DNA of 37,282 nucleotides, from contig NC_068996.1 in assembly GCF_001194135.2 (NCBI RefSeq), forward strand, positions 38,386,681 through 38,423,962, read 5' to 3'. Both the position numbers and the translations under genes were made by a program. The notes under the pieces were generated by a model. It was given only the letters and a program-made list of their open reading frames with translations, searched no databases and was not told where the DNA came from. Below, piece by piece: positions 13,567 through 36,913 of the stretch. Source of the stretch: Octopus bimaculoides (Eukaryota). How positions within the stretch are numbered: the first letter of the stretch is position 1; each line of letters begins with the position of its first letter.

Positions 13567-13598
<32 letters not shown>

Positions 13599-17135: not shown

Positions 17136-17169
17136 ATATCAACTAATATATATACACAGCGAGGATATA

Positions 17170-17551: not shown

Positions 17552-17649
17552 AAGTACTTTTCCTTCAGAGTGATAGGTAGGTTGTATGCTGCTTGTGTGC
17601 GAGTGTGATGCTATATAGCAGCTACACATGGGCTTTTAATGCAGCAAAT

Positions 17650-19759: not shown

Positions 19760-19957
19760 TTTTACAACCAGAAGAATATACTGCTTCAGAGTAAAGTACA
19801 AGAAATTCTTGTTTCACTGTTCCGCTTGCATGGAATGGTAAGAATACAAACACCTTTACTCATGCCGCAAAATAAAGTACATGAATTAAGCAGTGACTCA
19901 CCAATGACTGTTATGGACCAACAAGGACAGTTACTCTGTCTGCCAAATAATCTAAGG
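19760..19957 (+). CDS. EIF2AK4: GCN2 (eIF2-alpha kinase 4) internal exon, start of HisRS-like domain
   Basis: tttcag acceptor, 198 nt, phase 0/0, donor AGG|gtaaga. Translates to FYNQKNILLQSKVQEILVSLFRLHGMVRIQTPLLMPQNKVHELSSDSPMTVMDQQGQLLCLPNNLR, matching the recalled human GCN2 segment IFKRHGAVQLCTPLLLP...FMDHSGMLVMLPFDLR. Confidence 0.9.
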
Positions 19958-21146: not shown

Positions 21147-21847
21147 ATATATTTTGTTTGACAAAGTATTTCATACTTGGGTGTCTAATCTTTTTATTTC
21201 TCATAACTGAAAATAATAGAATGAATTCAGCAGAATACCTGAAAAGCCTTCTTTTCTCTTAGACAAAGAGTTTGTTCTGAATCATCTGATTCATCCTCTC
21301 TCCACAATATTTAAACTTAATCAAACTCATGAACTTTACTGCATAAATTTTGCTGAGATCACCAGTTTCCTTGAACTATATTTTTTAAGAATAGTATTTT
21401 CTCCTGTCTAAAGAGTACAAAACAATTACTGCAGAAAGGTTTAAAAGCATAAGTATGTGATTAATCGACTACAATGATAATCCTATTTGTGGATGTTTAA
21501 GAAGTTTGTTTCTTAATCATAAGATCCAGGTTCAATCTAACTTTATGGCATCTTATATGCAAATGTCTTTTTTTATTATTGCCTCGAGTCAACCCAAGTC
21601 TTATAAATGTGAGTAATCAGAAATGTGTGGAAACTCATCAGCTTCATTGTACATGTAAATCGAATACAGTTTTGTGATGCACTGTTATGCTGATTCTGTT
21701 TGTGAATTATGCCAAGGGTACACATGTCTGTGGAATGCTCAGCCATTTACGCACCAATTTCACTGAAAAGTTAATCCAGTCAACTGAATCCTATCCTCAC
21801 CATCAAAACTGGCAGATTCATTTACTTACCCTGCCCCACTCTCTCTT

Positions 21848-22227
21848 AAAGTGGAGGGAAGTTGTGGAAGAGGAAGACCCAGGAAGACATAGTAAGGAGT
21901 ACTGAAGGCTGATCTGAAAATGCTGAGCCTTAGGAAGGAGATGACAGAGGACCGGGATATGTAGCACATTGCTGTACTCAAGAAGACCTGCCCACCACAA
22001 CAGAATTGAGATTCTAAAAAGGCATCACATGAAAAGCATTGGTATGGGTGCTGGTGCCATGTAAAAAACACTCTGTAAAGTGGTTGGCACTAGGAAGTGC
22101 ATCCAGCTGTAGAAACAAAGGCCAAAACAGACTATGGAACTTGGTGCAGCCTTCAGCATTGCCAGTTCCTGTCAAGCCATCCGCCTCATGCCAGCATGGA
22201 AAACGGACATTAAATGTTGATGATGAT
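21848..22227 (+). mobile_element. RTE LINE 3' end (ORF2 C-terminus, 3'UTR and (GAT)n)
   Basis: KVEGSCGRGRPRKT**GVLKADLKMLSLRKEMTEDRDM*HIAVLKKT, then ggtgccatgtaaaaaacac...ggttggcactaggaagtgcatccagctgtagaaac...catggaaaacggacattaaatg(tga)n. Confidence 0.85.
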
Positions 22228-23257
22228 ACACTAACACATACATACTTACATAAATATGTGTATATGTGAGTGTGTATGTTTACATATTTATATGTGTATG
22301 CATGTAGATAGAGATATAATCCAAGTCGTGCCCTCTTGAAGCACATGCTTATTCCAGTACTTCAAAATTGTATGTAGGTGTTATATTTGTGTGAAGTATG
22401 CATAAGATTGAAAAATACTGGAAAATATTTTTTGTAGAGTAATTACATATCAAAACAGAAGATTGGAAAAAATTTTTGGTATTATTTATTCAACATTACA
22501 CATGTTTTCTATAGGAATATGCCTTTGCATGTCTGCCTATGCGTATAAGAGAGAGTATAAATGTGTGTTCGTGTGTCTATATATACAGATGCTTAAAGTA
22601 TTGCATTGTTTTTTGTATATATTAATGACCGTTGTATGTGAGAGAAAATACATTTTGTTATTCTTAAACTGTATCTCTGTGTCCATGGTTAGAAATTCAT
22701 TTTATATAAATGTATCATCTTAACACAAATTTTGATTCATTTATTTAATCTGCGTAAGAGTAGTTTTATCTTAATATAGGTGCATGTGTAAGTATAAACA
22801 TTTGTAACAATGTACAAAATTTATACAACATACAGAGTCTGTCAAAATAATGTATACACATTTCAGGAAAGGAAAAATCTGTATAAATATTTAACTTGTA
22901 TAAGTAGCTCTATAAATATAGATACCTCTTTCGATGTTTTATCAAATTGTGATAACACTGAATAAATTGTGTGTTTCTATGTGTTTGATGATATATATCA
23001 GTATTTATGTGTAATGTATTATGTATGATATATTTGTGCATGTATATAGATATATGTGTTTGCTCATATATAAGTTGATATATGTGTCTATGTAGCTATG
23101 TGTTTATATGTGAGTGTGTATATATAAATATACATGTGTGTAAGTGTGAATATGTTTGTATAAGTGTATATATGTGTGTTTATATGTATATAGAAATACA
23201 TGTCTTATTTTGTATATGTATATGCAAGTGTGTTGTGTATATATGTATATATGTATC

Positions 23258-23612
23258 ACCATCTTCATCATCATCATTTAATGTCCATTTTCTGTGCTGG
23301 CATGGATTGGACGGTTTGACTGAAAACTGGTAAGCTGGAGAGCTACACCAGGTTCCAGTCTAATTTGGCATGGTTTTTATGGCTGGATGTCCTTTCTAAT
23401 GCCAACCACTCCAAGAGTGTAGTGCGTGCATTTTATGTATTAGTTATGTAACACCAGCATTGGCCATGACTACAATCTCACTTGGTGTGATGGGTCTTCT
23501 TAAGCACGTCACTTGTCACTACCTCCATGAGGCCCAATGTTTGAAGGGTGCTCTTTTTGTGCCACCAGCAGGGTGCCACTTATGCGACACTGGCATCGGG
23601 TACAACTACTGT
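23258..23612 (-). mobile_element. RTE-derived 3' end with upstream module
   Basis: (CAT)n tail on the + strand, ggatgtcctttctaatgccaacc, an ORF2-end remnant and one hairpin module. Confidence 0.75.
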
Positions 23613-23790
23613 TTCATATGTATGTGTATGAATATGTTATATATACACACACACATATATAAATAGATAAATATGTGTATGTGCATATATGTGTTTATGT
23701 TCATATGTATTTGAATATAAGTGTGTGTGTATGTGTGTATCTATTTAAATGTACATATACGTGTGTGTATATCTATATATATCTGCGTCT

Positions 23791-24340
23791 TCATCATCAT
23801 CATCATCATCATCATCATCTTCTAGCGTCCGTTGTCCATGCTGGCATGAGTCGGACAGTTTGACCAGGCTGCAGCAGACCCCAGTCTGATTTGGCATGGT
23901 TTCTACACCTAGATGCCCTTCATAATGTCAACCACTCCAAGAGTGTAATGGGTGCTTTTACATGCCACCAGCACAGGTGCCATTTGCATGACACCAATAT
24001 CTGCCACGACTAAGATTTTACTTGGCTTGATGGGTGTTCTCAAGCATGGCATACTGCCAAAGGTCTCAGTCACTAGTCATTGCCTCCATGAAGTCAACAC
24101 ATGAAGGATGCTTTTTACATGCCACCAGTACAGGTGCCAGTTACGTGACACTGGCATAGGCAACATTGCCTACATGAGGTCCAACAGTCAAAAGGTGCAT
24201 TTTACATGCCACCGGCACAGGTGCCAGTTACAGGACACTAGCATAGCCACATTGTCTCTGTGAGGCCCAATGCTTGACAGGTATTTTTTATGTGCCACTG
24301 ACATAGGTAGCAGTTGCTGCTGTGAGGCCCAATGCTTGAT
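23791..24340 (-). mobile_element. RTE-derived 3' end with tandem upstream modules
   Basis: (CAT)n tail, RTE 3'UTR, an ORF2-end remnant (EAMTSD*DLWQYAMLENTHQAK*) and 3-4 modules of about 75-80 bp. Confidence 0.75.
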
Positions 24341-24834
24341 ATACATACATAAACATAAATGTGTATGTGTGTACACTTATTACGTCAATCTCTTTTCTAT
24401 ATTACTCTCTTTTCTATATTACTAGTTTTGTTATTTCTTCTCCCCTCCAACTATCTATAGGACTCTTGATTACTAACTATATATAAAGGCTTCATTGAAC
24501 TGTAAATTTTGTATTACTCATGTATAGAAAACTTGTGAGAAATTTTACTGTACAGGAAAATTTGTTGTAAGGTACTATATGGACAATGATAAGGTGTATA
24601 TCTCAAACTAACAAAAATAAATGATAACAGGTTTTATAAAAGCATTAAATAGGCAAGTTTTTATCAACATCAGACATTAAAAAAAATGTGATGAGTCATT
24701 TAAAATGAAATTTTTTATGGTGAATTTTCCTTTGGAAAAATTTTCTATAATCTGTTTAATTCTCTGTCTGAAGAATTTCTAATCAGAGATATTTTAGATG
24801 TTTTTCCTGCATGTAGAGCTTTGTAACTTCTGTG

Positions 24835-24913
24835 GCAAGTGCCTTCTACTATAGCCTCGGGCTGACCAAAGCCTTGCAAGTGGAAACTGAAAGAAGCCCA
24901 CCATATATACATG

Positions 24914-24966
<53 letters not shown>

Positions 24967-25164
24967 TACCCCACCATCACTTGACAACCGATGCTGGTGT
25001 GTTTAAATCTCTGTAACCTAGTGGTTCAGCAAAACAGACTGATAGAATAAGTACTAGGCTTACAAACAATAAGTCCTGGAGCGAGTGGTTCAACTAAAGG
25101 TGGTGATCCAAGATGGCCACAGTCAAATGACAACCAAGTAAAAGGGTTAAGAGAGAGTAAAAGA

Positions 25165-25165
<1 letters not shown>
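24835..25165 (+). mobile_element. 5'-truncated SINE family B
   Basis: ggcaagtgccttctactatagcctcgggctgaccaaagcc through the family tail. Confidence 0.8.
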
Positions 25166-25204
<39 letters not shown>

Positions 25205-25206
<2 letters not shown>

Positions 25207-25500
25207 TGTAAATTATAATAATGGTATTTATATAAGCTTAAAGCTTATACCAATTACTGTGCAATGACTAAAAAAAATAGTCTAATAATAGGACATATGA
25301 GCCCTTGACAGAAAAAAGTAGGTTTTCCCATTTCCCATCCATGTGAGTCTCAAAGGGTTCAAATCCCATGCAGATGGGAAAGCCTACTTCTTTCTGTTGA
25401 GGTCTTATATGCCCCATTATTAGACTATTTTCCTTAATCATTGCATGGTGATTGCTATAAGCCTTAAGCTTGTATAAATACCATTATTATTATTTACAGG
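25205..25500. mobile_element. About 296-bp foldback (palindromic) MITE
   Basis: Arms of about 120 bp (CCTGTAAATTATAATAATGGTATTTAT... / ...ATAAATACCATTATTATTATTTACAGG) pair along their length around a central spacer of about 50 nt. Confidence 0.8.
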
Positions 25501-25586
25501 ACTGTAAAACTCAGCACCATATAACAAAACCATTTGCATATATATATTTATTAATGATATGTATATATATATATATATATATATAT

Positions 25587-26058
25587 CATCATCATCATCA
25601 TCATCATCATCATCGTTTAACGTCCGCTTTCCATGCTAGCATGGGTTGGACGATTTGACTGAGGACTGGTGCAACCGGATGGCAACACCAGGCTCCAATC
25701 TAATTTGGCAGAGTTTCTACAGCTGGATGCCCTTCCTAACGCCAACCACTCAGAGAGTGTAGTGGGTGCTTTTACATGTCACCCGCACGAAAACGGCCAC
25801 GCTCGAAATGGTGTCTTTTATGTGCCACCCGCACAAGAGCCAGTCCAGGGGCACTGGCAACGATCTCGCTCGAAAACCCTACGAGGCCAGTCAGGCAGTA
25901 CTGGCAACGGTCACGCTCAGGATGGTACATCTTATGTGCCACCCGCACAAGAGCCAGTCCAGGGGCACTGGCAACGATCTCACTTGGCTTGCCGGGTCTT
26001 CTCACGCACAGCACATTTCCAAAGGTCTCGGTCAGTAGTCATCGCCTCGGTGAGGCCC
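25587..26058 (-). mobile_element. Young 5'-truncated RTE LINE with 15-bp TSD
   Basis: Minus frame GLTEAMTTDRDLWKCAVREKTRQAK*, then a modular 3'UTR and (GAT)n tail. TSD atttattaatgatat at 25546-25560 and 26059-26073. Confidence 0.88.
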
Positions 26059-26111
26059 ATTTATTAATGATATATATGTATTTATTTATTGTATATATAT
26101 ATATTAATAAC

Positions 26112-26512
26112 AGGTGCAGGTGTGGCTGTATGGTAAGTAGCTTGCTTACCAACCACACAGTTCTGGCTTCAGTCCCACTGTGGCACCTTGGGCAAGTGTC
26201 TTCGACTATAGCCTTGGGCTGACCAAAGCCTTGTGAGTGGATTTGGTAGATAGAAATTGAAAGAAGCCTGTCATATATATATATATATTTATATATATAA
26301 GTATATGTGTTTGTCTGCCTTTGTACCCCTGCCATTGCTTGACAACTGATGTTTGTTTGTTTACGTCACTGTGACTTAGCAGTTTGGCTAAGAGACTTAT
26401 AGAATAAGTACTAGGCTTACAAAGAATAAGTTCTGGGGTTGGTTTGTTCAACTAAAAACGGTGCTCCAGCATGGCCACAGTCAAATGACAGAAACAAATA
26501 ACAGAATAAAAA
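26112..26512 (+). mobile_element. SINE family B, CpG-decayed
   Basis: Full-length match to the reverse complement of 17170-17551, with CG>TG/CA changes. Confidence 0.88.
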
Positions 26513-26540
26513 ATTATTAATAATAATAATAATGATAATC

Positions 26541-27168
26541 ATCATCATCATCATCATCATCGTTTAACATCCACTTTCCATGCTAGCATGAGTTGAACGA
26601 TTTGACAGGACTGGTGAAACCAGATGGCTACACCAGGCTCCAATCTGATTTGGCAGAGTTTCTACAGCTGGATGCCCTTCCGAACACCAACCAGTGTGAG
26701 AGTGTAGTGGGTGCTATTACGTACCACCAGCACGAAGGCCAGTCAGGTGGTACTGGCAACAACCACACTCAAAATAGTGTATTTTACGTGCTACCTGCAC
26801 AGGAGCCAGTCCAGGGGCACTGGCAACGACTTCGCTCGAATGTTTTTTCATGTGCAAGTAAGGTGACGCTAGTAACGATCACGCTCAAATGGCTATTTAC
26901 GTGCCACTGGCACAGAAGCCAGACAGCTGCTCTGGCAATGATCATGCTTGGACGGTGCTCTTAGCGCTCCACTGGTACAGGTGCCATCACGATTTTGATT
27001 TTACTTGCTCCAACAGGTCTTCGCAACCTGAGTTTAGTATCCAATGAAGGAGAGGCTGGCATGGGTGCCAGTCGTTGAATTTGGTTCGATTTCGATTTCA
27101 CTTGCCTCAACAGGTCTTTGCAAGCGCAGTTTAGTGTCCAATGAAGGAAAGGTACACATAAGTGGGCA
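26541..27168 (-). mobile_element. RTE-derived 3' end with extended modular UTR
   Basis: (CAT)n tail, RTE 3'UTR, GCCAGT..ACTGGC hairpin modules, and two copies of an ORF2-stop-like segment (gaagacctgttgaggcaagtgaaatcg). Confidence 0.8.
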
Positions 27169-27229
27169 TTTATTTATTAATNNNNNNNNNNATATATATA
27201 GATATATATATATATATAGAGAGAGAGAG

Positions 27230-27556
27230 AGGTGCAGGAGTGGCTGTGTGGTAAGTAGCTTTCTTAGCAACCACTTGGTTCTAGGTTCAGTCCCACTGCA
27301 TGGCACCTTAGGCAAGTGTCTTCTACTCTTGCCTCGAGGTGACCAAAGCTTTGTGAGTGAATTTAGTAGATGGAAACTGAAAGAAGCCCATCGTATACAT
27401 ATATATATATGTATGTATGTATATGTTTGTGTGTCAATGTTTGTCCCCACAACATCGCTTGACAACCGATGCTGGTGTGTTTACATCCATGTAACTTAGC
27501 AGTCTGGCAAAAGAGAGTGATAGAATAAGTCAAATGACTGAAACAAATAAAAGAAT
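27230..27556 (+). mobile_element. SINE family B with an internal deletion in the tail
   Basis: Head, CORE-like segment and (AT)n middle are present. The tail jumps from gatagaataag to tcaaatgactg. Confidence 0.85.
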
Positions 27557-27557
27557 A

Positions 27558-28215
27558 TATCAAAGTCAGTGAAAAGTAAGCAGCGTTTTGAACCATGAAG
27601 AATTTGTGCTGGATTTTTGCAGAGTTTTGAATTTGTTTTAAACAAATTTTTTTGCAATTATCTGATAATACAGACAGACTTGCTCAAATGCATCAATAAA
27701 TTAACATTGATGTTTTTTTCACCGTTGTTACAATTATCTGTCAAAGCGCAATATTTGAGCAATTTTGCTATTCAGCTTCAGAAAAGAATGTAAAGCAGCT
27801 GAAACTGCTCGTGATATCAATGAAATGTTTGGTGACGAAATGACCAGTGAGTGGTCAGCTTGAAAATGGTTTAAACGACTTTTCAGTGGAGACCTGAGTC
27901 TTAAAGATTGTGAGCATAGTGAATACCCATCTGTCATCGATGACGGTCAATTAAAGACCGTCATTGAGAAAGATCCACGTAAAACCACTCAAGAACTTCA
28001 AGTTAGCCAGAAAACTGCTTGCAACCATTTGCATGTGATCAGAAAATCAAGAAAGCTCAACAAATGGGTATCACATGATTTGAATGAAAATCAGAAAATG
28101 CACAGATATGAAATTTGCTCGTTGCTTCTTCTCTGTAACCAGACTGATCCATTTCTCAACCATATTGTTACTTGTGATAAAAAGTGGATTCTGTAAATAA
28201 TAAAAGACGTTCTTA
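27558..28215 (+). mobile_element. Mariner transposon remnant (left TIR-like end plus N-terminal transposase pseudogene)
   Basis: AILLFSFRKECKAAETARDINEMFG...KWFKRLFSGDLSLKD...IEKDPRKTTQEL...LNKWVSHDLNENQK...DPFLNHIVTCDKKWIL contains the WVPHEL and TGDEKW-like mariner motifs. TIR-like tatcaaagtcagtgaaaagtaagcagcgtttt at the start. Confidence 0.88.
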
Positions 28216-28397
28216 AAAAAAAATAAAAGTATTGTTCTTGCTATTCAAAAATCTAAGACCAGTTCAAACCATTCACCCCTAAATAACAATGTTAAAAGAA
28301 CTATTTCAAGATGATGATCAGTAATTTCAAGCAATTCTTTCAAAAAATACCAAGAGCAGAAATATATTCCTATTGAAAAATATACTTTGCAGAACTA

Positions 28398-28821
28398 TTA
28401 TCCCTTTGGCATTTAAAACAGCCATATCCAGCCCAAATATTCTAACTGTGTTTTTGTTGAAACTGACTGGATCCTGTCTCTCACACTTATTCTACAATCA
28501 CATCTTCAAAATCTCAAAGCTACAAGATAATATGTGATTAATTCAAAACAATGTGAATAAATAAGCATTACATTTGACAGTATAATCTGAATGCTAAAGG
28601 GTTAAATCAGCCACAACCAGCTCAAATATTCTATCTTTTTTATGTTGAAACTGGCCAGATCCAGCCTCTTACACTTACCCTACAATGTTAATCTAAAAAT
28701 AAACAATCCCATCTTTAAAATCTTGAAGCCACAAGATAATACATGATTAATTTTTTTTTTTTTTAAATGTGAATAAATCAACATTACATTTGACAAAGTA
28801 ATTTGAATGTTAAACGATTAA
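28398..28821. mobile_element. Tandem pair of piggyBac-like (TTAA) MITEs
   Basis: ttatCCCTTTGGCATT...AATGCTAAAGGGttaa (28605), then a second body ending aatgttaaacgattaa (28821). Confidence 0.72.
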
Positions 28822-29200
28822 GGTAGACACTTAAAAAAAAAGTAAAGAAAAAGAAAAGGCAGCTATGTCATGTCATGGTAGTGTACTTAGTTATGTTTCT
28901 TGAATAGTAGCTTTTTAGTTAATCAGCTAGCATGGGAAAAGCAAACATTTAACTAAATCTGATGTTTTGCTAATACAATTAATGATAATAACAGTTAATG
29001 ATGGAGCTGATGCTGGCATTGAAACATGATTATCTTCTGCTTTACATTAACGTTCTTTCAGGAATGAAACAAGTTCCATTAGGCTGTATATTTCACTCTA
29101 CATACTCTGTACATTTTACATTTTCTGTTCTGTAGTTTTGGCAAAACATCACTAGATGAATAATTCTCAGTAACTTTCTTCAATTATTTTATTTTCTAAG

Positions 29201-29349
29201 GTTCCCTTTGCTAGATACGTGAAACGTAAACGCATTCAAAATTTGAAGTGTTATAATATTGACAGAGTCTTCCATGTAAAGTTACCTGGGTTACAACCTA
29301 AAGAAGTTATTGAATGCAGTGTAGATATTGTAACACCTTCAAAGGAAAG
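29201..29349 (+). CDS. EIF2AK4: GCN2 internal exon, HisRS-like motif 2 region
   Basis: ttttctaag acceptor, 149 nt, phase 0/2, donor AG|gtaagg. Translates to VPFARYVKRKRIQNLKCYNIDRVFHVKLPGLQPKEVIECSVDIVTPSKE, versus human IPFARYVARNNILNLKRYCIERVFRPRKLDRFHPKELLECAFDIVT. In frame with the previous exon. Confidence 0.92.
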
Positions 29350-29689
29350 GTAAGGTCTGATTTATTCCCAAGTCTTTCTTCTTGGGTAGTTAGAATGATG
29401 CACATGTGAGATTTTAACTTTGTTTTTTTCAGTACAGTTTGTGAGTAGTGTGATACTTAAGTATATGGTGTCTAAAGGCATGTTGTGTTTGGAGAGGGGC
29501 ATGTGAGGATTAGTGTTATCAAGGCTAATTCTAAAGTTTTTCAGGCTGTGCATAGAATAATGATGCTACTTCACTCAGACTTTTAGTGGAATTTAAAATT
29601 GCTCAGTTTCCAGATTCTGGAGATTAGGCAGTGTTGGGTACAAGTAGCTTGTGAGTGCAGTGATTTCTTCAGGTGTTTGAAACAAATAT

Positions 29690-30031
29690 AACCCCTGGGG
29701 GTCATTGCAAGCAAAGTAGTAAATTGGGGATCCACAGTAGTATTTTAAGGGTCCATGATATAATTTTGCTTCTGATATATTTATTGCAAGAAACAGCTAG
29801 GTTTCCTTCTTTAATGTTTTACATAGTTCAATGTTTCCAGCTACTGAAACACATTTTCTCAGAGAGTGCTATTGCAAACTTATACAAGTGAACATGTGAA
29901 AAACAAAAATAGGAATTTTGAAAGAAGTTTCTATAAAACTAGTTTTTAAACATAGAATGGCTATGTGGATCCACCAGAATAAAATAGTAATCAAAGGAGT
30001 CCATAGATAAAAAAATGGTTGAGAATCTCTG
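29690..30031. mobile_element. hAT-Charlie MITE, same family as 13936-14259
   Basis: Shared interior (ataggaattttgaaagaagt..ctataaa.ctagtttt). Right TIR gttgagaatctctg followed by gtctagat, a Charlie-type NTCTAGAN site. Confidence 0.7.
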
Positions 30032-30463
30032 GTCTAGATGGACTGTATATACTTTATATTTGTATTCTTGTCTTGTTTAATGAAAGCATTTGTTTGATGT
30101 GCATTTGTTATCAAGAGTTGTTATTATGATGTGAGGCATGGCCATTGTTAAGTTTATCTTCTGCACATTTCTGTCATTGGACTATGATTAAGGGCCATGC
30201 TGGAGTACTGCCTTGAAGGGTCTTCAACTTTGTAGAGTAGAAGGCCCCACCAACAATTGGGTCCCACATTTCCTAGCACTGGCCCTGCATGTACGCGGAC
30301 TTCTATATCTGTATCTATGTATCTGTTTATATAAACAATTATGATTATTCTTGTAGTTATGTATACAAATTTGTTTATATATGCAACTATCACCATTCTG
30401 AATATCATTGTCATCACCACCACCACCACCACCTTTAAATTTTTTTTTTTTTTTCAATTTCAG

Positions 30464-30530
30464 TTCTTTTCCTGAAGGAGAACTATTATATATTCTTCAA
30501 AATGTGATAAGTAAATTTCCTATATTACGT
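30464..30530 (+). CDS. EIF2AK4: GCN2 internal exon
   Basis: Poly-T tract plus tttcag acceptor, 67 nt, phase 2/0, donor |gtaagt. Translates to (S)SFPEGELLYILQNVISKFPILR, versus human SFLPTAEIIYTIYEIIQEFPALQ. Phase matches the preceding donor. Confidence 0.88.
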
Positions 30531-30734
30531 GTAAGTTCATTATTATTTTACAACGTTTTATGCATTTGTATGTATGTATGTGTATGTAAACCATAACAAA
30601 ACAGAAAAAATTGGTATCTAACATAAACCAAAAACTGAGTGGTAAAAATATGCGTGTGCATGTTTGAAGAGCGATAAGTGATATCATAATGGAGAGATCC
30701 ATCCATGATAAAAGGAGAAAGTGTTGGATGATTG

Positions 30735-31510
30735 GGGTGTTTTATTCTTCTTTTTACTTGTTTTAGTCATTGGGCTGTAACCATACTGGGGCACTGCCTT
30801 GAAAGATTTAGTCTAACAGATCAACCCCAGTACTTACTGTTTCTTAAGCCTGGTGCTTATTCTGTAGATATCTTTTGCCAAACTGCTAAGTTAAAGAAAA
30901 GTAAACATAGGTGCAGGCATGGCTATGTGGTAAGAAGCTTGCTTCTCAGCGACGTGGTTCCGGGTCCAGTCCCACTGTGTGGCACCTTGGGCAAGTGTCT
31001 TCTACTATAGCCTTGGGCTGATCAAAGCCTTGTGAGTGGATTTGGCAGATGGAAACTGAAAGAAGCCCATTGTATATATATATATGTATGTATTTATTTG
31101 TGTGTGTGTGTGTGTGTCTGTGTTTGTCCCCCTGCCATAACTTGACAACCGATGCTGGTGTGTTTATGTCTCCATAACTTAGCATTTTGGCAAAAGAGAC
31201 TGATAGAATAAGTATTAGGCTTTCAAAGAATAAGTCCAGGGTTGACTCTAAGGCTGTGCTCCAGCATGGCCACAATTAAACATATATTAAACAATTAAAC
31301 AATTAAAAGAATAAAAGGATAAAACAATACCAAAACTGGTTGTCAGGCAATGGTGGAAGATAAACACAAATACACAAACACACATATATATATTCAGCAG
31401 GCTTCTTTCAGTTTCTGTCTACCAAATCCACTCACAAGGCTTTGGTTGGTTTGAGGCTATAGTAGAAGACACTTGCTGAAGGTGTGCCATGCACTTGGAC
31501 TGAACCATGC
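30735..31510. mobile_element. Nested SINE family B: a + copy (30909-31320) inserted into a - copy
   Basis: The minus-copy tail lies at 30735-30906 and its remaining body and head at 31325-31510, bracketing a full + copy. Confidence 0.75.
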
Positions 31511-31630
31511 CTATGTCTGTTTATATATTTTTTTTAATCATTTGAAGAGATATCATGATATCATACCTATGATTGTCATAGGTATTTCTTAGACTGGTAA
31601 GCTCAGTTTTTTTAAAATTGTAGTCTAGAA

Positions 31631-31810
31631 CAGTGCTCCAAAACCGGTATGTCACTGGTGTGCCATGAGACGATGCTAGGTGTGCCACAGTATAAGCTGA
31701 ATATAATTTCTTTTCCCTATACTTTTAGTTATATTTTTAGTTCAGGTATGCTGCTGAATTTTGCAATGAATATAAGTGTACCACAAGTGGAAAAAATTTG
31801 CATAGCACTG
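31631..31810. mobile_element. 180-bp hAT-Charlie MITE with TSD
   Basis: CAGTGCTCCAAA...TTTGCATAGCACTG termini, flanked by gtctagaa (31623-31630) and gtcaagaa (31811-31818). Confidence 0.8.
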
Positions 31811-32181
31811 GTCAAGAAGAAGGGGTTTCCATGACACTTTCCAGAGTTTCAAGACTGGAGATATATAAAATGAAGGAGTTATCCTTAGATTGGAGGGAGA
31901 TGCGGCCTGAATGCTTGAAACAAAATTGATTCTGCTAAAGGCATCAAAGGTGGTGATGTTAAACTGCCCACCAAAAAACAAGAATAGTTCTTCTCACATA
32001 TTTCCACACTATTTCTTCTCTACCAATTTTTACTAATATGGCTTTGGTTGACCTGGAGCTATAGTCAACTGAATGCTGCACAGTAGGATCAAATCCAAAA
32101 TCACAATAAAATCAAAGTTGTGAAGTAAATTTCTTGGCAATGTAGCCATGTGTGTTAGCTATTAGTTTATATTAAGTATGA

Positions 32182-32392
32182 AAGGCAACAAACTGGCAGA
32201 GATGTTAGCTCGCCAGGCAAAATGCTTAGCAATATTTATGTTCTGAGTTCAAATTCTGCCGAGGTTAACTTTGCTTTTCATCCTTTCAGGGTCAATAAAT
32301 TAAGTTCCAGTATATGCACTGAGGTCAATCTAATCGACTGGTCCCCTCCCCTAAAATTTTGGGCCTTGTGCCTGGAGTAGAAAAGAATATTA
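32182..32392 (+). mobile_element. SINE family A, CpG-decayed
   Basis: Head aaggcaacaaactggcag, B box gagttcaaattc and body gaggttaactttgcttttcatcctttcagggtcaataaat. Confidence 0.82.
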
Positions 32393-32759
32393 AGAATATT
32401 AATGTAAAATTTGAATGAAATCGGTTGGATAGTTCTTGAGTTTTAGTGATGCACAAATACAGACAGTCAGACAGATTCACATTCTCAGTTTATATATATA
32501 TATATATATANNNNNNNNNNAACCTTGGGAGAGGCATTATGCCGGTAATAAACACACGCACTGGTTCAGTCCTTTATTAATTTATATAGTTTTTTGTTAA
32601 ATTATTTCATTGCACTCTTGCAATCTTTTCAGTAACTTGTCTCTCCACTTCCATTTATTTCAACACACGTATCCACATCAAGAATCTTGCACACGAAATA
32701 CACATACGAAATATATATATATACTTTATTATTATTAAAGCTGCAATGACGTTTTGCAA

Positions 32760-33960
32760 ACAACTTGCACATGCAAGTACTACCAGTTGAGAACTCTGCA
32801 CACTGGAAGCCAGCAAGTGTATGGGGTCATCAGGAGAGAATGGGTGTTGTTTCGGGGCTTACCTCTCGATGGCATCAATGTACACCAATCTCACTGATAT
32901 GAGGCCCCACTTGCTAGATCAACTGGTTATCAAATAAAGCTCAATATTCCTCTAGCCTTCGCTCATCATCTCTTTTATAACCAAATCCAGTGACTAGCCT
33001 TTACCACTGTAGTTTGGATATTGGTCATGGTGGTATTTACTTTACAATGAGTTAGGTCTAACGATAACAACAGTTGTCTCACACTGTGTCCAACAGACAC
33101 CCTACATATGACTTCGATTGGAAAATGCTCCGCTTTCCAGCCTGTGTATGCACATTCCTTGAGAAGGTTTATATAACGGTCAATCTTTCGAACCCAAGTG
33201 GCATCCATGTTATCTTCATGAAGAACTGTTAACTCAACTAGATTCACACCACATTAAAATGTCCAGTTTTTTTGTAACTGGGATGGGAAAGACTCCCTGG
33301 CACCCTGGTAAATCTGCAGTGACCTCCCAATAGCCGTTCCACTTTTCATCACTCACAGGAAGTTTGTTGTTCTTCTTGAAACGGATCCGCTGTCCTGAGT
33401 GCGCGAAGATAATGAAATCTTTAGTTGGTACTTTCAACGTTTTGTTTTCACTGTTGTTGAGATCAATTTGGTTCTTTATAGCATTGAAGATAACCTTAAG
33501 GACCAGGTTGTGTCCCCATGTATACCTGTTCAATGCTAATGAACAGTTGGAAAGAATATATTTCAGTGTTCCGACCTTTCCACATTTGCATATATCATTC
33601 TCTGAGACGTTCCATCTTACTAGATTTGCAGGTAATGGCAAAACATCATAGGATGACTGAATCACAAAACTTAGCCGAGATGTGGTTTACCTCCATATCT
33701 TATTTTCCTCTCAACAACATGTTCCTCCCATCTCGTCATCTGTCCTTGTTGAATGCATTGGATCAAATGAAGCTCTCTTCTATCTGCTTCCCTCGTTTTG
33801 ATGCTGTTGCTAACAACAGATCTGCATTCACTCTGCATCATACTTGCAAACGGTCTGAACCGATCTACCCCAAAACCAAGTCCCTTCTAATGAATTTGCA
33901 TCACAAAAGTATCACAATAAACTGCTATTCGGAGTTTCATGTTTCCGTTCATCGGACAGT
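32760..33960 (-). mobile_element. 5'-truncated HERO-clade non-LTR retrotransposon (zinc knuckle, REL endonuclease, structured 3'UTR)
   Basis: QQGQMTRWEEHVVERKI; IQSSYDVLPLPANLVRW...CKCGKVGTLKYILSNC...RYTWGHNLVL; LVELTVLHED...RKIDRY...GWKAEHFPIEVICR...ASHWIWL. These match recalled HERO motifs (SVYDVLPSP.NL..W, RY.WRHD.VL, ELTVPWE, GW.....VEVGCRG, ASRWLWL). Contains frameshifts. Confidence 0.85.
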
Positions 33961-34279
33961 TTAGTGTCCAACGAACAGGAACATGAAACTCTGAGTAGCA
34001 GTTTTTTTTTGTGTTGTTTTTGCAGCTTTAATAATAATAAAGCATATTACTCTACTTCTGGTATTTGAGTACTATTTTTTCCAACCCTGTTTCACATTTA
34101 TGTGTTTACCTTGGTAAATGACTGAAACAAAAAAAAAAATATATATATCATGATTTTAGCTTTTTGAAATTATTATTTTTGTAAGGGTAGAATTACAGGC
34201 TCTATCTTAAAATTTGTGTTCAAATTTCATCATTTTGGTAAGTTTGGAATTCTATAACCAGAGCAATAATATTTATCCC

Positions 34280-34760
34280 CACTTAAACATGGATATTCTG
34301 TTAGAACAAACTATACTGTGATAGATACCACGAGAGAAACTCTCATATTGTCTTTTAGTGCAAAATGCATTCTCGTTTATATCACTAGCAGGGGAGATAA
34401 ATCCCCACGACCTCCAGCACCAAGACTAGCAGATCACACAGTTTTGACCTTCCCTGGTCTTATCGATGATGGATGCGAGACTGCTAGAGACAACAGCAAT
34501 TCATCTCCATGCCAGTACATGCACTGGTGTCGTGATTAGCCATTGAGCTTGTTAAAAAATATATATATTAACAACAGAGGCAATATCAATACCAATGATA
34601 TCTTCACTTAAATGTGGATGTTCTGTAGGAACAAACTATACTGCAAAAATAACCACGAGAGAAACTCCCATATTAGCATTTGGTGCAAAATGCATTCTTG
34701 TTTATATCACTAGCAGGGGAGATAAATCCCCACCGTCTCCAGTGCCAAGACCCCTTGATC
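34280..34760. repeat. Diverged tandem duplication, two units of about 155 bp with a 325-bp period
   Basis: cacttaaa..gga..ttctgt..gaacaaactatactg...accacgagagaaactc.catatt... occurs at 34280 and 34605, with an identical 34-nt core. Confidence 0.85.
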
Positions 34761-35011
34761 ATTTAGATTATTGGGTCTTTTTGCATCACTGCCTCATTGT
34801 TCTAATTGCCTTTTCTTCCTGATGTTTCCCTTTCTCTTATTATTTGCTTACATCCTCTCAATAAATCAGACAGACAATGTTATTTACTTTGAGAATGAAT
34901 GTATTATTGTATCAAGTTTTATGTTCAAATTTTTTCCTGGTTTTGAGTTTATTATCCCCTTTTCAGAGATCTTGTTGTTTAGTGGAATATATTAAATATA
35001 TGTCCTCACAT

Positions 35012-35171
35012 AGGTACATCATGGCTGTGTGGTAAAAGGTTTGCTTCCTAACCACATGGTTCCAGGTTTAGTCTCGCTGCATGGCACCTTGGGCATGTGT
35101 CTTCTACTATAGCCTTAAGCTTACCAAAGCCTTGTGAGTGCATTTGGTCGATGGAAAATGAAAAGAGGTCT

Positions 35172-35252
<81 letters not shown>

Positions 35253-35505
35253 CACACACACACATATAATGTATAGGTATGTATGTGTCTTTATGTCTGT
35301 GTTTGTAACCCACCACAACATGACAAGCAGTGTTGGTGTGTTTACATCCCTGTTACTTAGTAGTTCAGCAAAAGAGACCAATAGAACAAGCACCGAGTCA
35401 GAAACATAAAATAAGTACTGAATTCAATTCGTTCAATGGAAAATCTTTTAAGGTGGTGCCCCTGCATAGCTGCAGTCTAATGACTGAAAAAAGTAAAAGA
35501 TAAAA
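35012..35505 (+). mobile_element. SINE family B with expanded internal (AT)n, CpG-decayed
   Basis: Head, CORE-like segment, about 75 bp of (AT)n and the family tail. Confidence 0.82.
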
Positions 35506-35585
35506 GAAAGAAAGTGAGGTTTGTACCATTGAAAAGAAGTTTTAAATGTTTATGCGATATTTATTACTTTATCTTTTTAATCTAG

Positions 35586-35705
35586 CAACAGGAAAAGAAC
35601 TGTACATTCATTGTAAACCATGCGTTACTTCTTCGATCATTTTTACTTCACTGTAACATAGAGGAAGAACAACACAGAGAATTTTTCAAGATGGTTGAAA
35701 AACAG
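35586..35705 (+). CDS. EIF2AK4: GCN2 internal exon (alternative in-frame acceptor at 35592)
   Basis: tctttttaatctag acceptor, phase 0/0, donor CAG|gtagga. Translates to (QQ)EKNCTFIVNHALLLRSFLLHCNIEEEQHREFFKMVEKQ, versus human ERNYSIYLNHTMLLKAILLHCGIPEDK. Confidence 0.88.
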
Positions 35706-35739
35706 GTAGGATTGTCAAACTATTGTTGTTGTCATTGAC

Positions 35740-35832
35740 TTCATCATCATCATCATCATCACCATCATCATCATCACCATCATCATCGTCATCACCATCA
35801 TCATCATCACAACCACCACCACCACCACCACC

Positions 35833-35866
<34 letters not shown>

Positions 35867-35870
35867 TCAT
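35740..35870. repeat. (CAT)n/(CAC)n microsatellite just inside the intron after the 35705 donor
   Basis: Seen directly. Confidence 0.95.
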
Positions 35871-36236
35871 TTTTATATTGTTTTAATGTCTTTCTTTATA
35901 AATACCTGTAATGCAGCATCTTTCATTGTATCTAACTCACAATATATCAACTCAAGCCAGTGAAGGAGCTTCAACATAGACATTGAACTGCTAAAAGCAG
36001 CCAGATCTTCCTACTGTAAGACATGTTTAAGAAGCCCTTCTTCCCAACCATGTGATCTTGGGTTCAGTCCCACTGCATGACACCTAACATTAACAACCTT
36101 GAAGAGTGTCCAGGGTACTTTTTTTTCATGACACTGGCACCATTGAGATCACCATGTAAGTTAAAAGACAAACATCAAAACCCCTTGACTTAGTAGAGAG
36201 GGAGGTGGCTTTATGCTAGTTGTTGAAGGATTAGGA

Positions 36237-36912
36237 CAGTGGTTCACAACTGGGGCGTCCACATAGGATTTTGTTAAAATTTATCTGCAATGATATTGAT
36301 TATACTTCTAAGGCAAGCTGGTAGAAACGTTAGCACACTGGGCAAAATGCTTAGCGGTATTTCATCTATCTTTATGGTCTGAGTTCAAATTCCACTGAGG
36401 CCAACTGTGCCTTTCATCCTTTTGGGGTCGATAAATTAAGTATCATTTGCGTACTGGGGTTGATCTAATCGACTGGCTCCTCACTAAAAATTTCAGGCCT
36501 TGTGCCTAGAGTAGAAAACAATGTATACTTTACATCCAAATGTTAAAGGCGGTGAGCTGGCAGAAACGTTAGCATGCTGGGTGAAATGCTTAGCGGTATT
36601 TTCTGAGTTCAAATTCCACTGAGGTTGACTTTGCCTTTCATCCTTTCGGGGTTAATAAATTAAGTACCAGTTGCGTGCTGGGGTCGATGTAATTGACTGG
36701 CCCCCTCCCCAAAAATTTTGGGCCTTGTGCCTAGAGTAGAAAAGAATATTGATTATATTTTTACAATACACAAAACATTTCAACAATTTTTTTAATACAG
36801 TTCCTAATAATATTTAATTATAAAAATATAATTGGATTTTATTAAAACATCAATTAGCTGTTGGAGTCCAGTAGAGTAAAATAGGAATGAAAGGGGCTCA
36901 GAGGTAAAAAGA
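36237..36912. mobile_element. hAT-like MITE interrupted by two + strand SINE A copies (36311-36520, 36545-36748)
   Basis: Left TIR cagtggttcacaac and two complete family A bodies in tandem. The right TIR is lost at a SINE B head. Confidence 0.6.
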
Positions 36913-36913
36913 T

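What the first reader, a model, noticed from the sequence alone, without database searches (positions are those of the whole stretch)
29249..29275. GCN2 motif-2 arginine is encoded as His (CAT), one A-to-I edit from Arg
Seen: the exon reads LKCYNIDRVFHVK where human reads LKRYCIERVFRPR. H is CAT (29273-29275) and C is TGT (29249-29251); both are CpG-transition neighbours of CGT (Arg). The preceding exon has LPNNLR (AAT AAT, 19946-19951) where LP(F/Y)DL is usual. Established: the m2 residues (yeast Y1119/R1120) are needed for uncharged-tRNA binding and activation, and coleoids recode proteins by A-to-I editing. Inference: either this GCN2 copy has lost or altered tRNA sensing (relaxed paralog), or editing at A29274 (CAU>CIU, His>Arg) and A19949 (AAU>IAU, Asn>Asp) restores the consensus and acts as an editing-controlled switch on the amino-acid starvation sensor. 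The Cys cannot be restored by A-to-I editing.
Basis: partly seen in the sequence, partly recalled or inferred. Interest (0 to 1): 0.75.

Follow-up and report, generated by a model that had tools for sequence, protein, structure and literature searches.

The report
Octopus GCN2 lost a regulatory latch
The octopus amino-acid-starvation sensor kinase GCN2 really does encode histidine where almost all other species have a key arginine, but this looks like a fixed, selectively kept remodelling of a two-residue "latch" shared with cuttlefish, not an RNA-editing switch.

Summary
The window holds four exons of an Octopus GCN2 (EIF2AK4) HisRS-like domain. The motif-2 Arg (yeast R1120) is His (CAT 29273-29275). 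A conserved upstream Arg is Cys (TGT 29249-29251). The usual [F/Y/H]-Asp reads Asn-Asn (19946-19951).

The editing-switch reading is not supported, though RNA could not be examined. All three codons are identical in O. sinensis and O. vulgaris. Exons A+B differ from those species by 8 synonymous and 0 nonsynonymous changes, so this is not a relaxed copy. Cuttlefish GCN2 has Ile (ATT) at the same position, which editing cannot turn into Arg, and it shares Asn-Asn. Four non-cephalopod molluscs have Arg.

The first Asn sits at yeast Y1092. That residue is the cation-pi partner of R1120 in the fungal crystal structure, and Y1092C suppresses motif-2 mutations in yeast. Across 150 GCN2 representatives, loss of the aromatic and loss of the Arg go together.

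The best reading is that coleoids lost both halves of this latch, so the Arg became dispensable. Coleoid GCN2 models also show no detectable pseudokinase domain. This is a new variant of a known kinase, of moderate interest. The functional consequence is inferred, not shown.

The parts
19760..19957 (+). GCN2 exon A (start of the HisRS-like domain): FYNQKNILLQSKVQEILVSLFRLHGMVRIQTPLLMPQNKVHELSSDSPMTVMDQQGQLLCLPNNLR
   Evidence: The AG acceptor is at 19758-19759 and the GT donor at 19958-19959. The peptide is identical to O. vulgaris/O. sinensis GCN2 aa 637-702. It carries 5 synonymous and 0 nonsynonymous differences from O. sinensis.
19946..19951 (+). AAT AAT = Asn-Asn at the positions of yeast Y1092 and D1093 (the aromatic partner of the motif-2 Arg, and the Asp next to it)
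   Evidence: Numbering comes from the alignment to 9f58_A. The codons are the same in O. sinensis and O. vulgaris and in Sepia pharaonis. NN occurs in 5 of the rows counted, against YD/HD/FD in 98.
29201..29349 (+). GCN2 exon B (motif 2): VPFARYVKRKRIQNLKCYNIDRVFHVKLPGLQPKEVIECSVDIVTPSKE plus AG of a split Ser codon
   Evidence: Searches give the sequence and translation. The GT donor is at 29350-29351. The peptide is identical to O. vulgaris aa 703-751. It carries 3 synonymous and 0 nonsynonymous differences from O. sinensis.
29249..29251 (+). TGT = Cys where 145 of 150 GCN2 representatives have Arg (LK[R]Y)
   Evidence: Sepia has CGA (Arg) here. Yeast and another fungal Gcn2 (9bf3_A) have Gln here, so this Arg is not universal.
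29270..29275 (+). TTC CAT = Phe-His at the positions of yeast Y1119/R1120 (motif 2, 'm2')
   Evidence: CAT is present in all three Octopus genomes. Sepia has TTT ATT = Phe-Ile. In the AF2 model the His ends strand E92-102.
30464..30530 (+).
   Evidence: Found by tblastn with O. vulgaris GCN2, with splice sites read. It has 3 amino-acid differences from O. vulgaris.
35592..35705 (+). GCN2 exon C: EKNCTFIVNHALLLRSFLLHCNIEEEQHREFFKMVEKQ
   Evidence: It has 2 synonymous and 2 nonsynonymous differences from O. sinensis.
29242..29348 (+). Exonic RNA hairpin. The arms 29242-29260 and 29330-29348 form about 19 bp with one bulge. The loop region contains the His codon.
   Evidence: The MFE fold is stable in the exon, spliced and pre-mRNA contexts. 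Exon B has z = -2.8 (1 of 200 shuffles) and the O. sinensis exon z = -2.0. The hairpin is absent in Sepia (z = +1.6). A29274 is unpaired in the MFE, with P(paired) 0.31.

Best explanation
These are exons of the Octopus GCN2 (EIF2AK4) gene, probably from O. bimaculoides. They encode the start of the HisRS-like regulatory pseudoenzyme domain.

In coleoid cephalopods both members of a contact pair in the pseudo-active site have been replaced in the genome. One member is the aromatic residue equivalent to yeast Y1092. The other is the motif-2 arginine equivalent to yeast R1120. Octopus reads Asn...His and cuttlefish reads Asn...Ile.

The proposed history is as follows. The aromatic-Asp dipeptide became Asn-Asn in the coleoid ancestor. 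This is a natural analogue of the yeast Y1092C allele, which suppresses motif-2 mutations and de-represses the kinase. After that the arginine was no longer needed. It drifted independently to His (CGT to CAT) in the octopus line and to Ile in the cuttlefish line.

The resulting sequence is now kept by purifying selection. The domain still folds like a GCN2 HisRS-like domain.

I infer that coleoid GCN2 is regulated with a weakened or absent Y1092-R1120 latch. That would mean less dependence on the motif-2 arginine, and possibly easier activation. The genomically encoded His form would be the working protein.

Shown here: the sequence states, their fixation, the selection, the retained fold, and the covariation of the two positions. 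Inferred: the order of events and the effect on tRNA sensing and kinase activation.
For: Identity and register:
- PDB phmmer best hit is GCN2 8t7t_A (E 3e-22).
- The exon A+B peptide is identical to O. vulgaris CAI9734436.1 and O. sinensis XP_036367432.1, both annotated as GCN2.
- Yeast numbering comes from the 9f58_A alignment.

Fixation and selection:
- CAT, TGT and AAT AAT are identical in three Octopus genomes.
- Exons A+B show Sd 8 and Nd 0 over 72 synonymous and 273 nonsynonymous sites (p 3e-6). Introns differ by about 6-8%.

Cuttlefish and outgroups:
- Cuttlefish reads LANNLK ... RIFIGK, with ATT at the Arg position and AAT AAT at the NN position.
- Bivalves Sinanodonta and Mya, gastropods Plakobranchus and Lymnaea, a nemertean, a hemichordate, a sea urchin and Nematostella all have aromatic/Leu-Asp and Arg.

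Published structure and genetics:
- In the C. thermophilum crystal structure R1120 makes a cation-pi contact with F1090 (= Sc Y1092). Y1092C activates Gcn2 even over the m2 substitutions (PMC11363354).
- Y1092C was isolated as an intragenic suppressor of gcn2-m2. Alone it is constitutively active. The triple suppressor combination that includes it does not restore tRNA binding (PMC4335047).

Covariation over 150 representatives:
- Aromatic and Arg 109; aromatic and non-Arg 11 (6 of them Lys); non-aromatic and Arg 9; non-aromatic and non-Arg 21. Odds ratio 23, p 4e-11.
- After collapsing to 74 similarity clusters: odds ratio 12, p 2.6e-5.

Conserved columns and fold:
- Of 29 highly conserved catalytic-domain columns, the m2 Arg is one of only two lost in both Octopus and Sepia.
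- Fold retained: AF2 pLDDT 83, pTM 0.80. The best Foldseek hit is the human GCN2 HisRS-like domain, TM 0.81.
Against: - No functional data exist for any cephalopod GCN2.
- The covariation test is not phylogenetically rigorous. It fades to OR 4, p 0.07 when collapsed to 31 clusters.
- Nine representatives keep the Arg without the aromatic and five lose it with the aromatic kept, so the coupling is not absolute.
- Only two coleoid lineages (Octopus and Sepia) were available. Nautilus, squids and other octopods are missing, so the order of events is conjecture.
- In mammals motif 2 is also needed for P-stalk activation (PMC11363354). Its loss could mean real loss of responsiveness rather than a bypass.
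- Asn is not Cys, so equivalence with the yeast Y1092C allele is assumed.
- RNA editing at A29274 was not examined and would change the picture if it were high.
- I could not search an octopus genome for a second, canonical GCN2 copy.
Confidence: 0.55

Rival explanations
1. Restorative A-to-I editing. ADAR converts CAU to CIU (His to Arg) at 29274 and AAU to IAU (Asn to Asp) at 19949 in a regulated fraction of transcripts. Editing level would then set how much tRNA-responsive GCN2 is made. This is the first reader's switch, and it matches the 'harm-permitting/restorative' class of Jiang and Zhang.
For: - Both changes are chemically possible, by the codon table.
- CGT to CAT is a G-to-A substitution, the type the harm-permitting model predicts at edited sites (PMC6881472).
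- Exon B contains an Octopus-specific hairpin of about 19 bp surrounding the His codon (z -2.8), which could recruit ADAR.
- The A of AAT AAT is conserved between Octopus and Sepia.
Against: - Sepia has ATT at the Arg position, so no coleoid-wide requirement for Arg in the mRNA exists.
- Editing cannot restore the aromatic partner (AAU gives D, S or G), the Cys, or the octopus HisB changes GGNYA. An edited protein would still lack the latch.
- A29274 lies in a 3-nt internal loop (P paired 0.31), not in the stem, and has a 5' C and a 3' U. From general knowledge of ADAR preferences, this is a poor context.
- Median restorative editing levels in coleoids are below 2.5% (PMC6881472).
- His and Gln are the default transition products of CGN Arg codons, so being 'one edit from Arg' is expected by mutation alone.
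- No GCN2 entry was found in the editing-site supplements that could be searched. These are far from complete.
Confidence: 0.05
2. Functional decay. Coleoid GCN2 has lost uncharged-tRNA sensing altogether. The HisRS-like domain survives only as a dimerisation or scaffold module. The His, Cys and Asn-Asn changes are part of a general erosion of the regulatory domain.
For: - Octopus has lost 6 and Sepia 7 of 29 highly conserved catalytic-domain columns, against a mean of 2.1 (sd 1.6) in 82 other GCN2s.
- The HisB motif GGRYD reads GGNYA in Octopus.
- Pfam finds no pseudokinase domain and no HGTP_anticodon2 match in Octopus or Sepia, but finds both in a bivalve.
- tblastn finds no pseudokinase exons in either locus.
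- Octopus and Sepia are only 39% identical in this domain.
Against: - Exons A+B are under strong purifying selection within Octopus (Nd 0 against Sd 8).
- 23 of the 29 conserved columns are retained, including the residue equivalent to H1054 of the ABD-CD interface.
- The fold is predicted with confidence and is closest to human GCN2.
- The region after the catalytic-like domain still aligns end to end with canonical GCN2.
- Selection on a scaffold role would also give low dN/dS, so this rival is weakened but not excluded.
Confidence: 0.2
3. Near-neutral replacement. His at the motif-2 position is functionally adequate, being a partly cationic, planar side chain. Octopus GCN2 would then sense tRNA in the ordinary way, and nothing special happens here.
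For: - His is the second most common residue at this position: Octopus plus 12 other representative clusters out of 150. These include a wasp (Fopius arisanus) and a nematode (Romanomermis), and Lys occurs in 10 more.
- The rest of motif 2 (KxYxIxRVF) is intact.
Against: - Most His-bearing lineages have also lost the aromatic partner. This argues that His is tolerated only in a changed context, not that it is equivalent to Arg.
- Sepia has Ile, which is not cationic.
- None of the His-bearing GCN2s has been tested functionally.
Confidence: 0.18

Closest known systems
Canonical GCN2 / EIF2AK4 (yeast Gcn2; human GCN2, PDB 8t7t HisRS-like domain)
   Same: Orthologous gene. The Octopus orthologues have an RWD domain, an active-looking kinase domain (HRDLKPGN, DFG), a HisRS-like domain and a C-terminal region. 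The predicted fold is closest to the human GCN2 HisRS-like domain (TM 0.81). Most of motif 2 and the residue equivalent to H1054 are kept.
   Different: - The motif-2 Arg is His.
- Its aromatic partner and the adjacent Asp are Asn-Asn.
- The conserved Arg at the start of the motif-2 strand is Cys.
- HisB reads GGNYA instead of GGRYD.
- No pseudokinase domain is detectable.
- The anticodon-binding-like part is not recognised by Pfam.
- The protein is about 1200 aa instead of about 1650.
Yeast gcn2-m2 (Y1119L/R1120L) combined with its intragenic suppressor Y1092C (GCN2c), from Lageix et al. 2015 and the 2024 C. thermophilum structure paper
   Same: The same two structural positions are altered together: the motif-2 Arg and the aromatic that stacks on it. 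In yeast this combination restores kinase function without restoring tRNA binding.
   Different: The residues differ: Asn and His/Ile here, against Cys and Leu in yeast. The coleoid case is natural and fixed, not a laboratory allele. It keeps the motif-2 aromatic (Phe). No phenotype is known.
Restorative ('harm-permitting') A-to-I recoding sites of coleoids (Jiang and Zhang 2019)
   Same: A G-to-A substitution at a conserved nonsynonymous site in a coleoid gene, where A-to-I editing would recreate the ancestral amino acid.
   Different: No editing has been observed here. The orthologous cuttlefish codon is not editable to Arg. The adenosine is not in the duplex part of the local hairpin.
Authentic class II histidyl-tRNA synthetase (human HisRS, PDB 4g84 and 4phc)
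   Same: Same fold and recognisable motif 2. Exons A+B align to HisRS at E 3e-10.
   Different: It is part of a kinase gene. The invariant motif-2 Arg that binds ATP and the HisB Arg/Asp are missing, so it cannot be an enzyme.

Membership tests
GCN2 / EIF2AK4 | HisRS-like domain that follows a protein kinase domain in the same polypeptide | tested here: met
   The window exons are identical or near-identical to aa 637-812 of O. vulgaris/O. sinensis GCN2. Pfam finds RWD, Pkinase and tRNA-synt_His in that protein. The best PDB sequence hit is GCN2 8t7t_A. Foldseek's best hit is 8t7t_A, TM 0.81. The kinase exons themselves are not in the window.
GCN2 / EIF2AK4 | Motif 2 aromatic-Arg (yeast Y1119/R1120) needed for tRNA binding and activation | tested here: not met
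   Octopus reads Phe-His (TTC CAT 29270-29275) and Sepia reads Phe-Ile. Arg is present in 119 of 150 representatives.
GCN2 / EIF2AK4 | Pseudokinase domain between the RWD and kinase domains | tested here: not met
   Pfam finds a single kinase domain in the Octopus and Sepia proteins, against two in a bivalve. tblastn with bivalve and nemertean GCN2 finds nothing for residues of about 150-600 in the O. sinensis and Sepia loci. Four independent gene models agree. This lies outside the window.
GCN2 / EIF2AK4 | HisB motif GGRYD, shared by HisRS and GCN2 | tested here: not met
   O. vulgaris/O. sinensis read GGNYA (N935, A937). Sepia reads GGRFD. This lies outside the window.
GCN2 / EIF2AK4 | Anticodon-binding-like domain and C-terminal ribosome-binding/dimerisation domain | tested here: inconclusive
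   There is no Pfam HGTP_anticodon2 hit. However, Octopus aa 637-1201 aligns end to end with canonical GCN2 C-terminal halves at 26-28% identity.
GCN2 / EIF2AK4 | Activation by uncharged tRNA or the ribosomal P-stalk, and phosphorylation of eIF2-alpha | not testable with these tools
   This needs biochemistry or genetics.
ADAR A-to-I recoding site | A-to-G mismatch between RNA and genomic DNA at the site | not testable with these tools
   No RNA reads were available. No GCN2 entry was found in the editing supplements that could be searched. No transcript-derived octopus fragments were found in the protein collections.
ADAR A-to-I recoding site | The adenosine lies within a double-stranded RNA structure | tested here: inconclusive
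   A significant hairpin of about 19 bp spans 29242-29348 (z -2.8). A29274 lies in an internal loop inside it, with P(paired) 0.31. A19949 has P(paired) 0.42-0.61.
ADAR A-to-I recoding site | The editable adenosine is conserved in other coleoids (for conserved, functional sites) | tested here: not met
   The Sepia pharaonis codon is ATT (Ile), and editing would give Val, not Arg. The adenosines of AAT AAT are conserved.
Authentic histidyl-tRNA synthetase | Catalytic motif-2 Arg, HisA/HisB residues, and a free-standing enzyme | tested here: not met
   The motif-2 Arg and the HisB Arg/Asp are absent, and the exons belong to a kinase gene.

The most novel reading that the evidence does not exclude
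Coleoid cephalopods carry a naturally rewired amino-acid-starvation sensor. Three changes define it: loss of the Y1092-R1120 latch (a natural counterpart of a yeast m2-plus-suppressor double mutant), loss of the pseudokinase domain, and a fast-evolving tRNA-binding domain. As a result GCN2 would be activated by a different logic from that in yeast and mammals. It might be more constitutive, or driven by ribosome or P-stalk signals rather than by tRNA contacts at motif 2. The covariation of the two positions across eukaryotes would then be the first comparative evidence that the crystallographic cation-pi latch is a general regulatory element of GCN2. A minor add-on is that low-level His-to-Arg editing in neurons produces a second isoform.
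Probability: 0.3. Interest if true: 0.65.

Novelty: new variant of a known kind. Interest (0 to 1): 0.45.

Why it matters
[quoted passage not shown] How its HisRS-like domain turns tRNA or ribosome signals into kinase activation is still debated.

Motif 2 has been the standard loss-of-function handle for 30 years. Here is a whole animal clade whose GCN2 lacks the motif-2 arginine and also lacks the residue that stacks on it. Yet the sequence is under strong purifying selection.

Across eukaryotes the two positions tend to be lost together. This gives an evolutionary test of the latch proposed from the fungal crystal structure and from yeast suppressor genetics. It also points to simple experiments, namely Y1092N/R1120H alleles and octopus-yeast domain swaps.

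For cephalopod biology, it shows that a core stress-sensing kinase has been structurally pared down.

For the scan itself there is a caution. 'One A-to-I edit from the consensus' is the default outcome of CpG transitions at Arg codons, and it should not by itself flag an editing switch.

Tried and rejected
- The first homologous-protein search, with exons A+B, found nothing. A second search with a 7-sequence profile returned only proteins under about 600 aa and no cephalopod fragments. That index seems not to reach full-length GCN2. The un-indexed representative search was what worked.
- A first attempt to place the missing exon between B and C assumed phase 0 and gave a false candidate at 29712-29825. 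The real exon B2 (30464-30530) came from tblastn with the O. vulgaris protein. My first models of exon B (end 29350) and exon C (start 35586) were each wrong by a few bases and were corrected.
- I used a human GCN2 sequence recalled from memory, only as a tblastn lead. Everything taken from it was re-derived from database proteins.
- I looked for published editing calls in GCN2. Liscovitch-Brauer 2017 is not held. The supplements of Shoshan 2021 and Zhang 2023 do not mention E2AK4, EIF2AK4 or GCN2. Full-text searches for GCN2 or EIF2AK4 with octopus, cephalopod or RNA editing gave only irrelevant papers.
- Pfam found nothing in the long intronic ORFs.
- I considered that the His might fall in an alternative register, with the Arg deleted and the His aligned to the variable next position. 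The indel is downstream, and the residue directly after the motif-2 aromatic is His in every alignment and in the AF2 strand. Either register leaves no Arg.
- I considered a pseudogene or relaxed duplicate, and rejected it on dN/dS.
- The residue numbers printed are one too low. One search gives the correct ones.
Full report
**What is in the window**

On the + strand the window carries four coding exons of a GCN2 (EIF2AK4) gene:
- Exon A, 19760-19957.
- Exon B, 29201-29349.
- Exon C, 35592-35705.

The splice sites were read directly from the sequence. The spliced peptide is FYNQKN...LPNNLR|VPFARYVKRKRIQNLKCYNIDRVFHVK...SKE|SSFPEGELLYILQNVISKFPILR|EKNCTF...VEKQ.

A phmmer search of exons A+B against all PDB chains gives GCN2 (8t7t_A) as the best hit, E 3e-22. 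Human HisRS follows at E 3e-10.

An un-indexed HMMER search of 1.84 billion representative proteins found a 1201-aa protein, P0001. It contains the exon A and B peptides without a single difference. Its cluster holds O. vulgaris CAI9734436.1, O. sinensis XP_036367432.1 and a truncated O. bimaculoides model, XP_052829452.1.

The window differs from O. sinensis and O. vulgaris by about 6-8% in introns. It also differs by five amino acids in exons B2 and C. It therefore comes from another Octopus species, most likely O. bimaculoides. That species' RefSeq model stops exactly at the exon before exon A.

- CAT at 29273-29275 encodes the His of RVFHVK.
- TGT at 29249-29251 encodes the Cys of LKCYN.
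- AAT AAT at 19946-19951 encodes the Asn-Asn of LPNNLR.

HMMER aligns these without gaps to LKRYCIERVFRP and LPFDLR of mammalian GCN2, and to KRYHIAKVYRR of HisRS.

I counted along the full-length yeast chain 9f58_A. This puts yeast Y1119/R1120 on the octopus Phe/His, which validates the numbering. It puts yeast Y1092/D1093 on the two Asn.

An AlphaFold2 model of the O. vulgaris domain (17-sequence alignment, pLDDT 83, pTM 0.80) places the His as the last residue of the first motif-2 beta-strand. That is where class II synthetases and GCN2 carry the Arg.

The model's best structural match is the human GCN2 HisRS-like domain (TM 0.81). Yeast and Chaetomium Gcn2 come next, then HisRS.

**How unusual the states are**

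I counted the columns in the 150 best representatives, one per 50%-identity cluster. The tallies also include the window's own peptide as an extra row.
- Motif-2 position: Arg in 119, His in 14 (Octopus plus 12 other representatives), Lys in 10, and a scatter of Gln, Thr, Ile, Phe, Ser and Asn.
- Cys position: Arg in 145, and Cys only in Octopus.
- Asn-Asn position: the dipeptide is Tyr/His/Phe-Asp in 98 and Asn-Asn in 5.

All named outgroups have Arg and an x-Asp dipeptide. They are:
- the bivalves Sinanodonta woodiana and Mya arenaria;
- the gastropods Plakobranchus ocellatus and Lymnaea stagnalis;
- a nemertean, a hemichordate, a sea urchin and Nematostella.

The octopus states are therefore derived.

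**Not a relaxed copy**

I fetched the orthologous loci of O. sinensis (L001), O. vulgaris (L003) and the cuttlefish Sepia (Acanthosepion) pharaonis (L002).

CAT, TGT and AAT AAT are identical in all three Octopus genomes. Exons A+B differ from O. sinensis by 8 nucleotides, and all 8 are synonymous. There are 72 synonymous and 273 nonsynonymous sites. The chance that all eight are synonymous under neutrality is about 4e-6, and pS is 0.11.

Exons B2+C are much less constrained, with pN/pS about 0.5-0.7.

The part of the protein that carries the odd residues is thus under strong purifying selection within Octopus.

**The cuttlefish comparison**

Sepia GCN2 reads LANNLK ... LKRYNIDRIFIGK. In its genome the motif-2 position is ATT (Ile). 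The Cys position is CGA (Arg). The dipeptide is AAT AAT, as in Octopus.

A-to-I editing of AUU gives Val, never Arg. The motif-2 Arg is therefore absent from both major coleoid lineages, and in one of them it is beyond the reach of editing. Asn-Asn looks like a shared, older change.

Of 29 catalytic-domain columns that are at least 85% conserved in 82 other GCN2s, Octopus has lost 6 and Sepia 7. The others lose 2.1 on average (sd 1.6). The lost columns are largely different in the two animals. The motif-2 Arg is one of only two lost in both (correct residue numbers are).

**What the second position is**

The first Asn occupies the position of yeast Y1092.

The 2024 crystal structures of the Chaetomium Gcn2 HisRS-like domain show a cation-pi contact between motif-2 R1120 and F1090. 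F1090 is the counterpart of yeast Y1092. The authors note that Y1092C activates Gcn2 even over the Y1119L/R1120L substitutions. They suggest that the contact restrains activation (PMC11363354).

Lageix et al. isolated Y1092C as an intragenic suppressor of gcn2-m2. They showed that Y1092C alone is constitutively active. They also showed that the triple suppressor combination that includes it does not restore tRNA binding (PMC4335047).

Coleoids have thus changed both partners of this pair.

**Covariation across eukaryotes**

I tested whether the two positions go together across the 150 representatives:

| Y1092 position | R1120 position | Count |
|---|---|---|
| aromatic | Arg | 109 |
| aromatic | not Arg | 11 (6 are Lys) |
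| non-aromatic | Arg | 9 |
| non-aromatic | not Arg | 21 |

The odds ratio is 23, p 4e-11.

Related sequences inflate this figure. After collapsing to 74 similarity clusters the odds ratio is 12 (p 2.6e-5). With 31 clusters it is 4 (p 0.07).

Most of the other His-bearing lineages have also lost the aromatic. These are Val, Ser and Thr lineages and a protist-like Glu-Asp...His clade. The association is suggestive to strong, but it is not phylogenetically rigorous.

**Best explanation**

The His is a genomically fixed, selectively maintained state in a GCN2 whose Y1092-R1120 latch has been dismantled.

The simplest history has two steps. The aromatic-Asp pair became Asn-Asn in the coleoid ancestor, which made the Arg dispensable, as the yeast suppressor genetics would predict. 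The Arg then changed independently, by a CpG transition to CAT in the octopus line and to Ile in the cuttlefish line.

The sequence facts, the selection, the retained fold and the covariation are shown here. The order of events and the consequence for tRNA sensing and kinase control are inferences.

**The editing switch**

I could not look at RNA, so editing is not excluded. The evidence available argues against a switch:
- The cuttlefish codon is not editable to Arg.
- Editing could at most restore the Arg and the Asp. It could not restore the aromatic partner, the Cys, or the octopus-specific GGNYA in place of GGRYD.
- A29274 has a 5' C and a 3' U, and it lies in a 3-nt internal loop with pairing probability 0.31.
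- Published median levels of restorative editing in coleoids are below 2.5% (PMC6881472).
- His and Gln are the ordinary transition products of CGN Arg codons. Any such substitution is automatically 'one A-to-I edit from Arg'.

One point favours the idea. Exon B contains a significant, Octopus-specific hairpin of about 19 bp (29242-29260 pairing with 29330-29348). It has z -2.8 in the window and -2.0 in O. sinensis, and it is absent in Sepia at +1.6. It encloses the His codon and could be an ADAR substrate. If anything in this exon is edited, the adenosines in the stem are better candidates. They lie in the codons of K-C-Y-N-I and D-I-V-T-P-S-K.

**Other rivals**

General decay of tRNA sensing fits several observations:
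- many conserved residues are lost;
- the pseudokinase domain is missing;
- Pfam does not recognise an anticodon-binding-like domain.

It fits less well with dN = 0 in these exons and with a confidently predicted GCN2-like fold.

A near-neutral Arg-to-His replacement fits the recurrence of His in other lineages. It does not explain why His usually comes with loss of the aromatic, or why Sepia has Ile.

**Comparison with what is known**

The gene is a GCN2 orthologue, so it is not a new kind of system. It fails several features usually treated as defining: the motif-2 Arg, the pseudokinase domain, and in Octopus the HisB motif.

I found no paper that discusses cephalopod GCN2. The recent pseudokinase paper I checked makes no mention of molluscs.

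I rate it a new variant of a known kind. It is of moderate interest to people working on GCN2 regulation, mainly because of the natural 'm2 plus suppressor' configuration and the cross-eukaryote covariation. The specific headline of the finding, an editing-controlled switch, is unlikely.

Noticed in passing
window 29242-29260 pairing with 29330-29348 (exon B): An exonic hairpin of about 19 bp with one bulge, formed by the codons for LKCYNI and DIVTPSK. It is significantly stable in Octopus (z -2.8, and -2.0 in O. sinensis) and absent from the Sepia exon (z +1.6). The octopus-specific Arg-to-Cys change (CGN to TGT) lies in the 5' arm and improves pairing. The hairpin is a possible ADAR substrate or other RNA element.
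   Followed up: partly
Outside the window: O. vulgaris/O. sinensis GCN2 proteins (P0001, P0153), Sepia P0002, loci L001 and L002: Coleoid GCN2 has RWD, one kinase domain and a HisRS-like domain only. No pseudokinase domain is found by Pfam or by tblastn of the loci with bivalve or nemertean GCN2. The protein is about 1200 aa against about 1650-1700 in other animals. Pfam also gives no HGTP_anticodon2 hit.
   Followed up: partly
Outside the window: O. vulgaris GCN2 aa 933-937: The HisB motif GGRYD, described as shared by HisRS and GCN2, reads GGNYA in Octopus. It reads GGRFD in Sepia.
   Followed up: partly
window 1-18980: This part is not collinear with the O. sinensis GCN2 locus, whereas 18981-36913 is collinear with L001 52258-67270. 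The exon that precedes exon A (about 1.9 kb upstream in O. sinensis) is absent from the window. This stretch is full of N runs and simple repeats. It is either a large insertion or an assembly join. It probably explains why the O. bimaculoides RefSeq model (686 aa) ends just before the HisRS-like domain.
   Followed up: partly
window 30464-30530 and 35592-35705 (exons B2 and C): These exons are much less constrained than exons A and B. They carry 5 amino-acid differences from O. vulgaris in 61 residues, with pN/pS about 0.5-0.7. Two of the differences are A/G differences (Ser/Asn at AGT/AAT and Lys/Arg at AAA/AGA) between genomes.
   Followed up: partly
L002 63976-64135 against window 19958-29200: The intron between exons A and B is 160 bp in Sepia pharaonis and 9.2 kb in Octopus. 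The Sepia gene model P0002 ends in sequence that looks like a retrotransposon endonuclease, so its C-terminus is probably a mis-annotation.
   Followed up: no
window 2354-2506, 3135-3368, 13344-13596, 35740-35870: Long microsatellites: (ATA)n, (TA)n, (ACAT)n and, just after exon C, (CAT)n/(CAC)n. There are also 1673 N in several gaps. This is typical repeat-rich octopus intronic DNA.
   Followed up: no
Representatives P0091, P0096, P0120, P0125, P0126, P0128, P0145 (metagenome/Logan, unnamed): A clade of GCN2-like proteins has LLPEDL[TC] ... KRYDIDRV[FYH]H. It carries His at the motif-2 Arg position and Glu instead of the aromatic partner. The organisms are unknown, perhaps protists. It is a second, independent example of the paired loss.
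   Followed up: no
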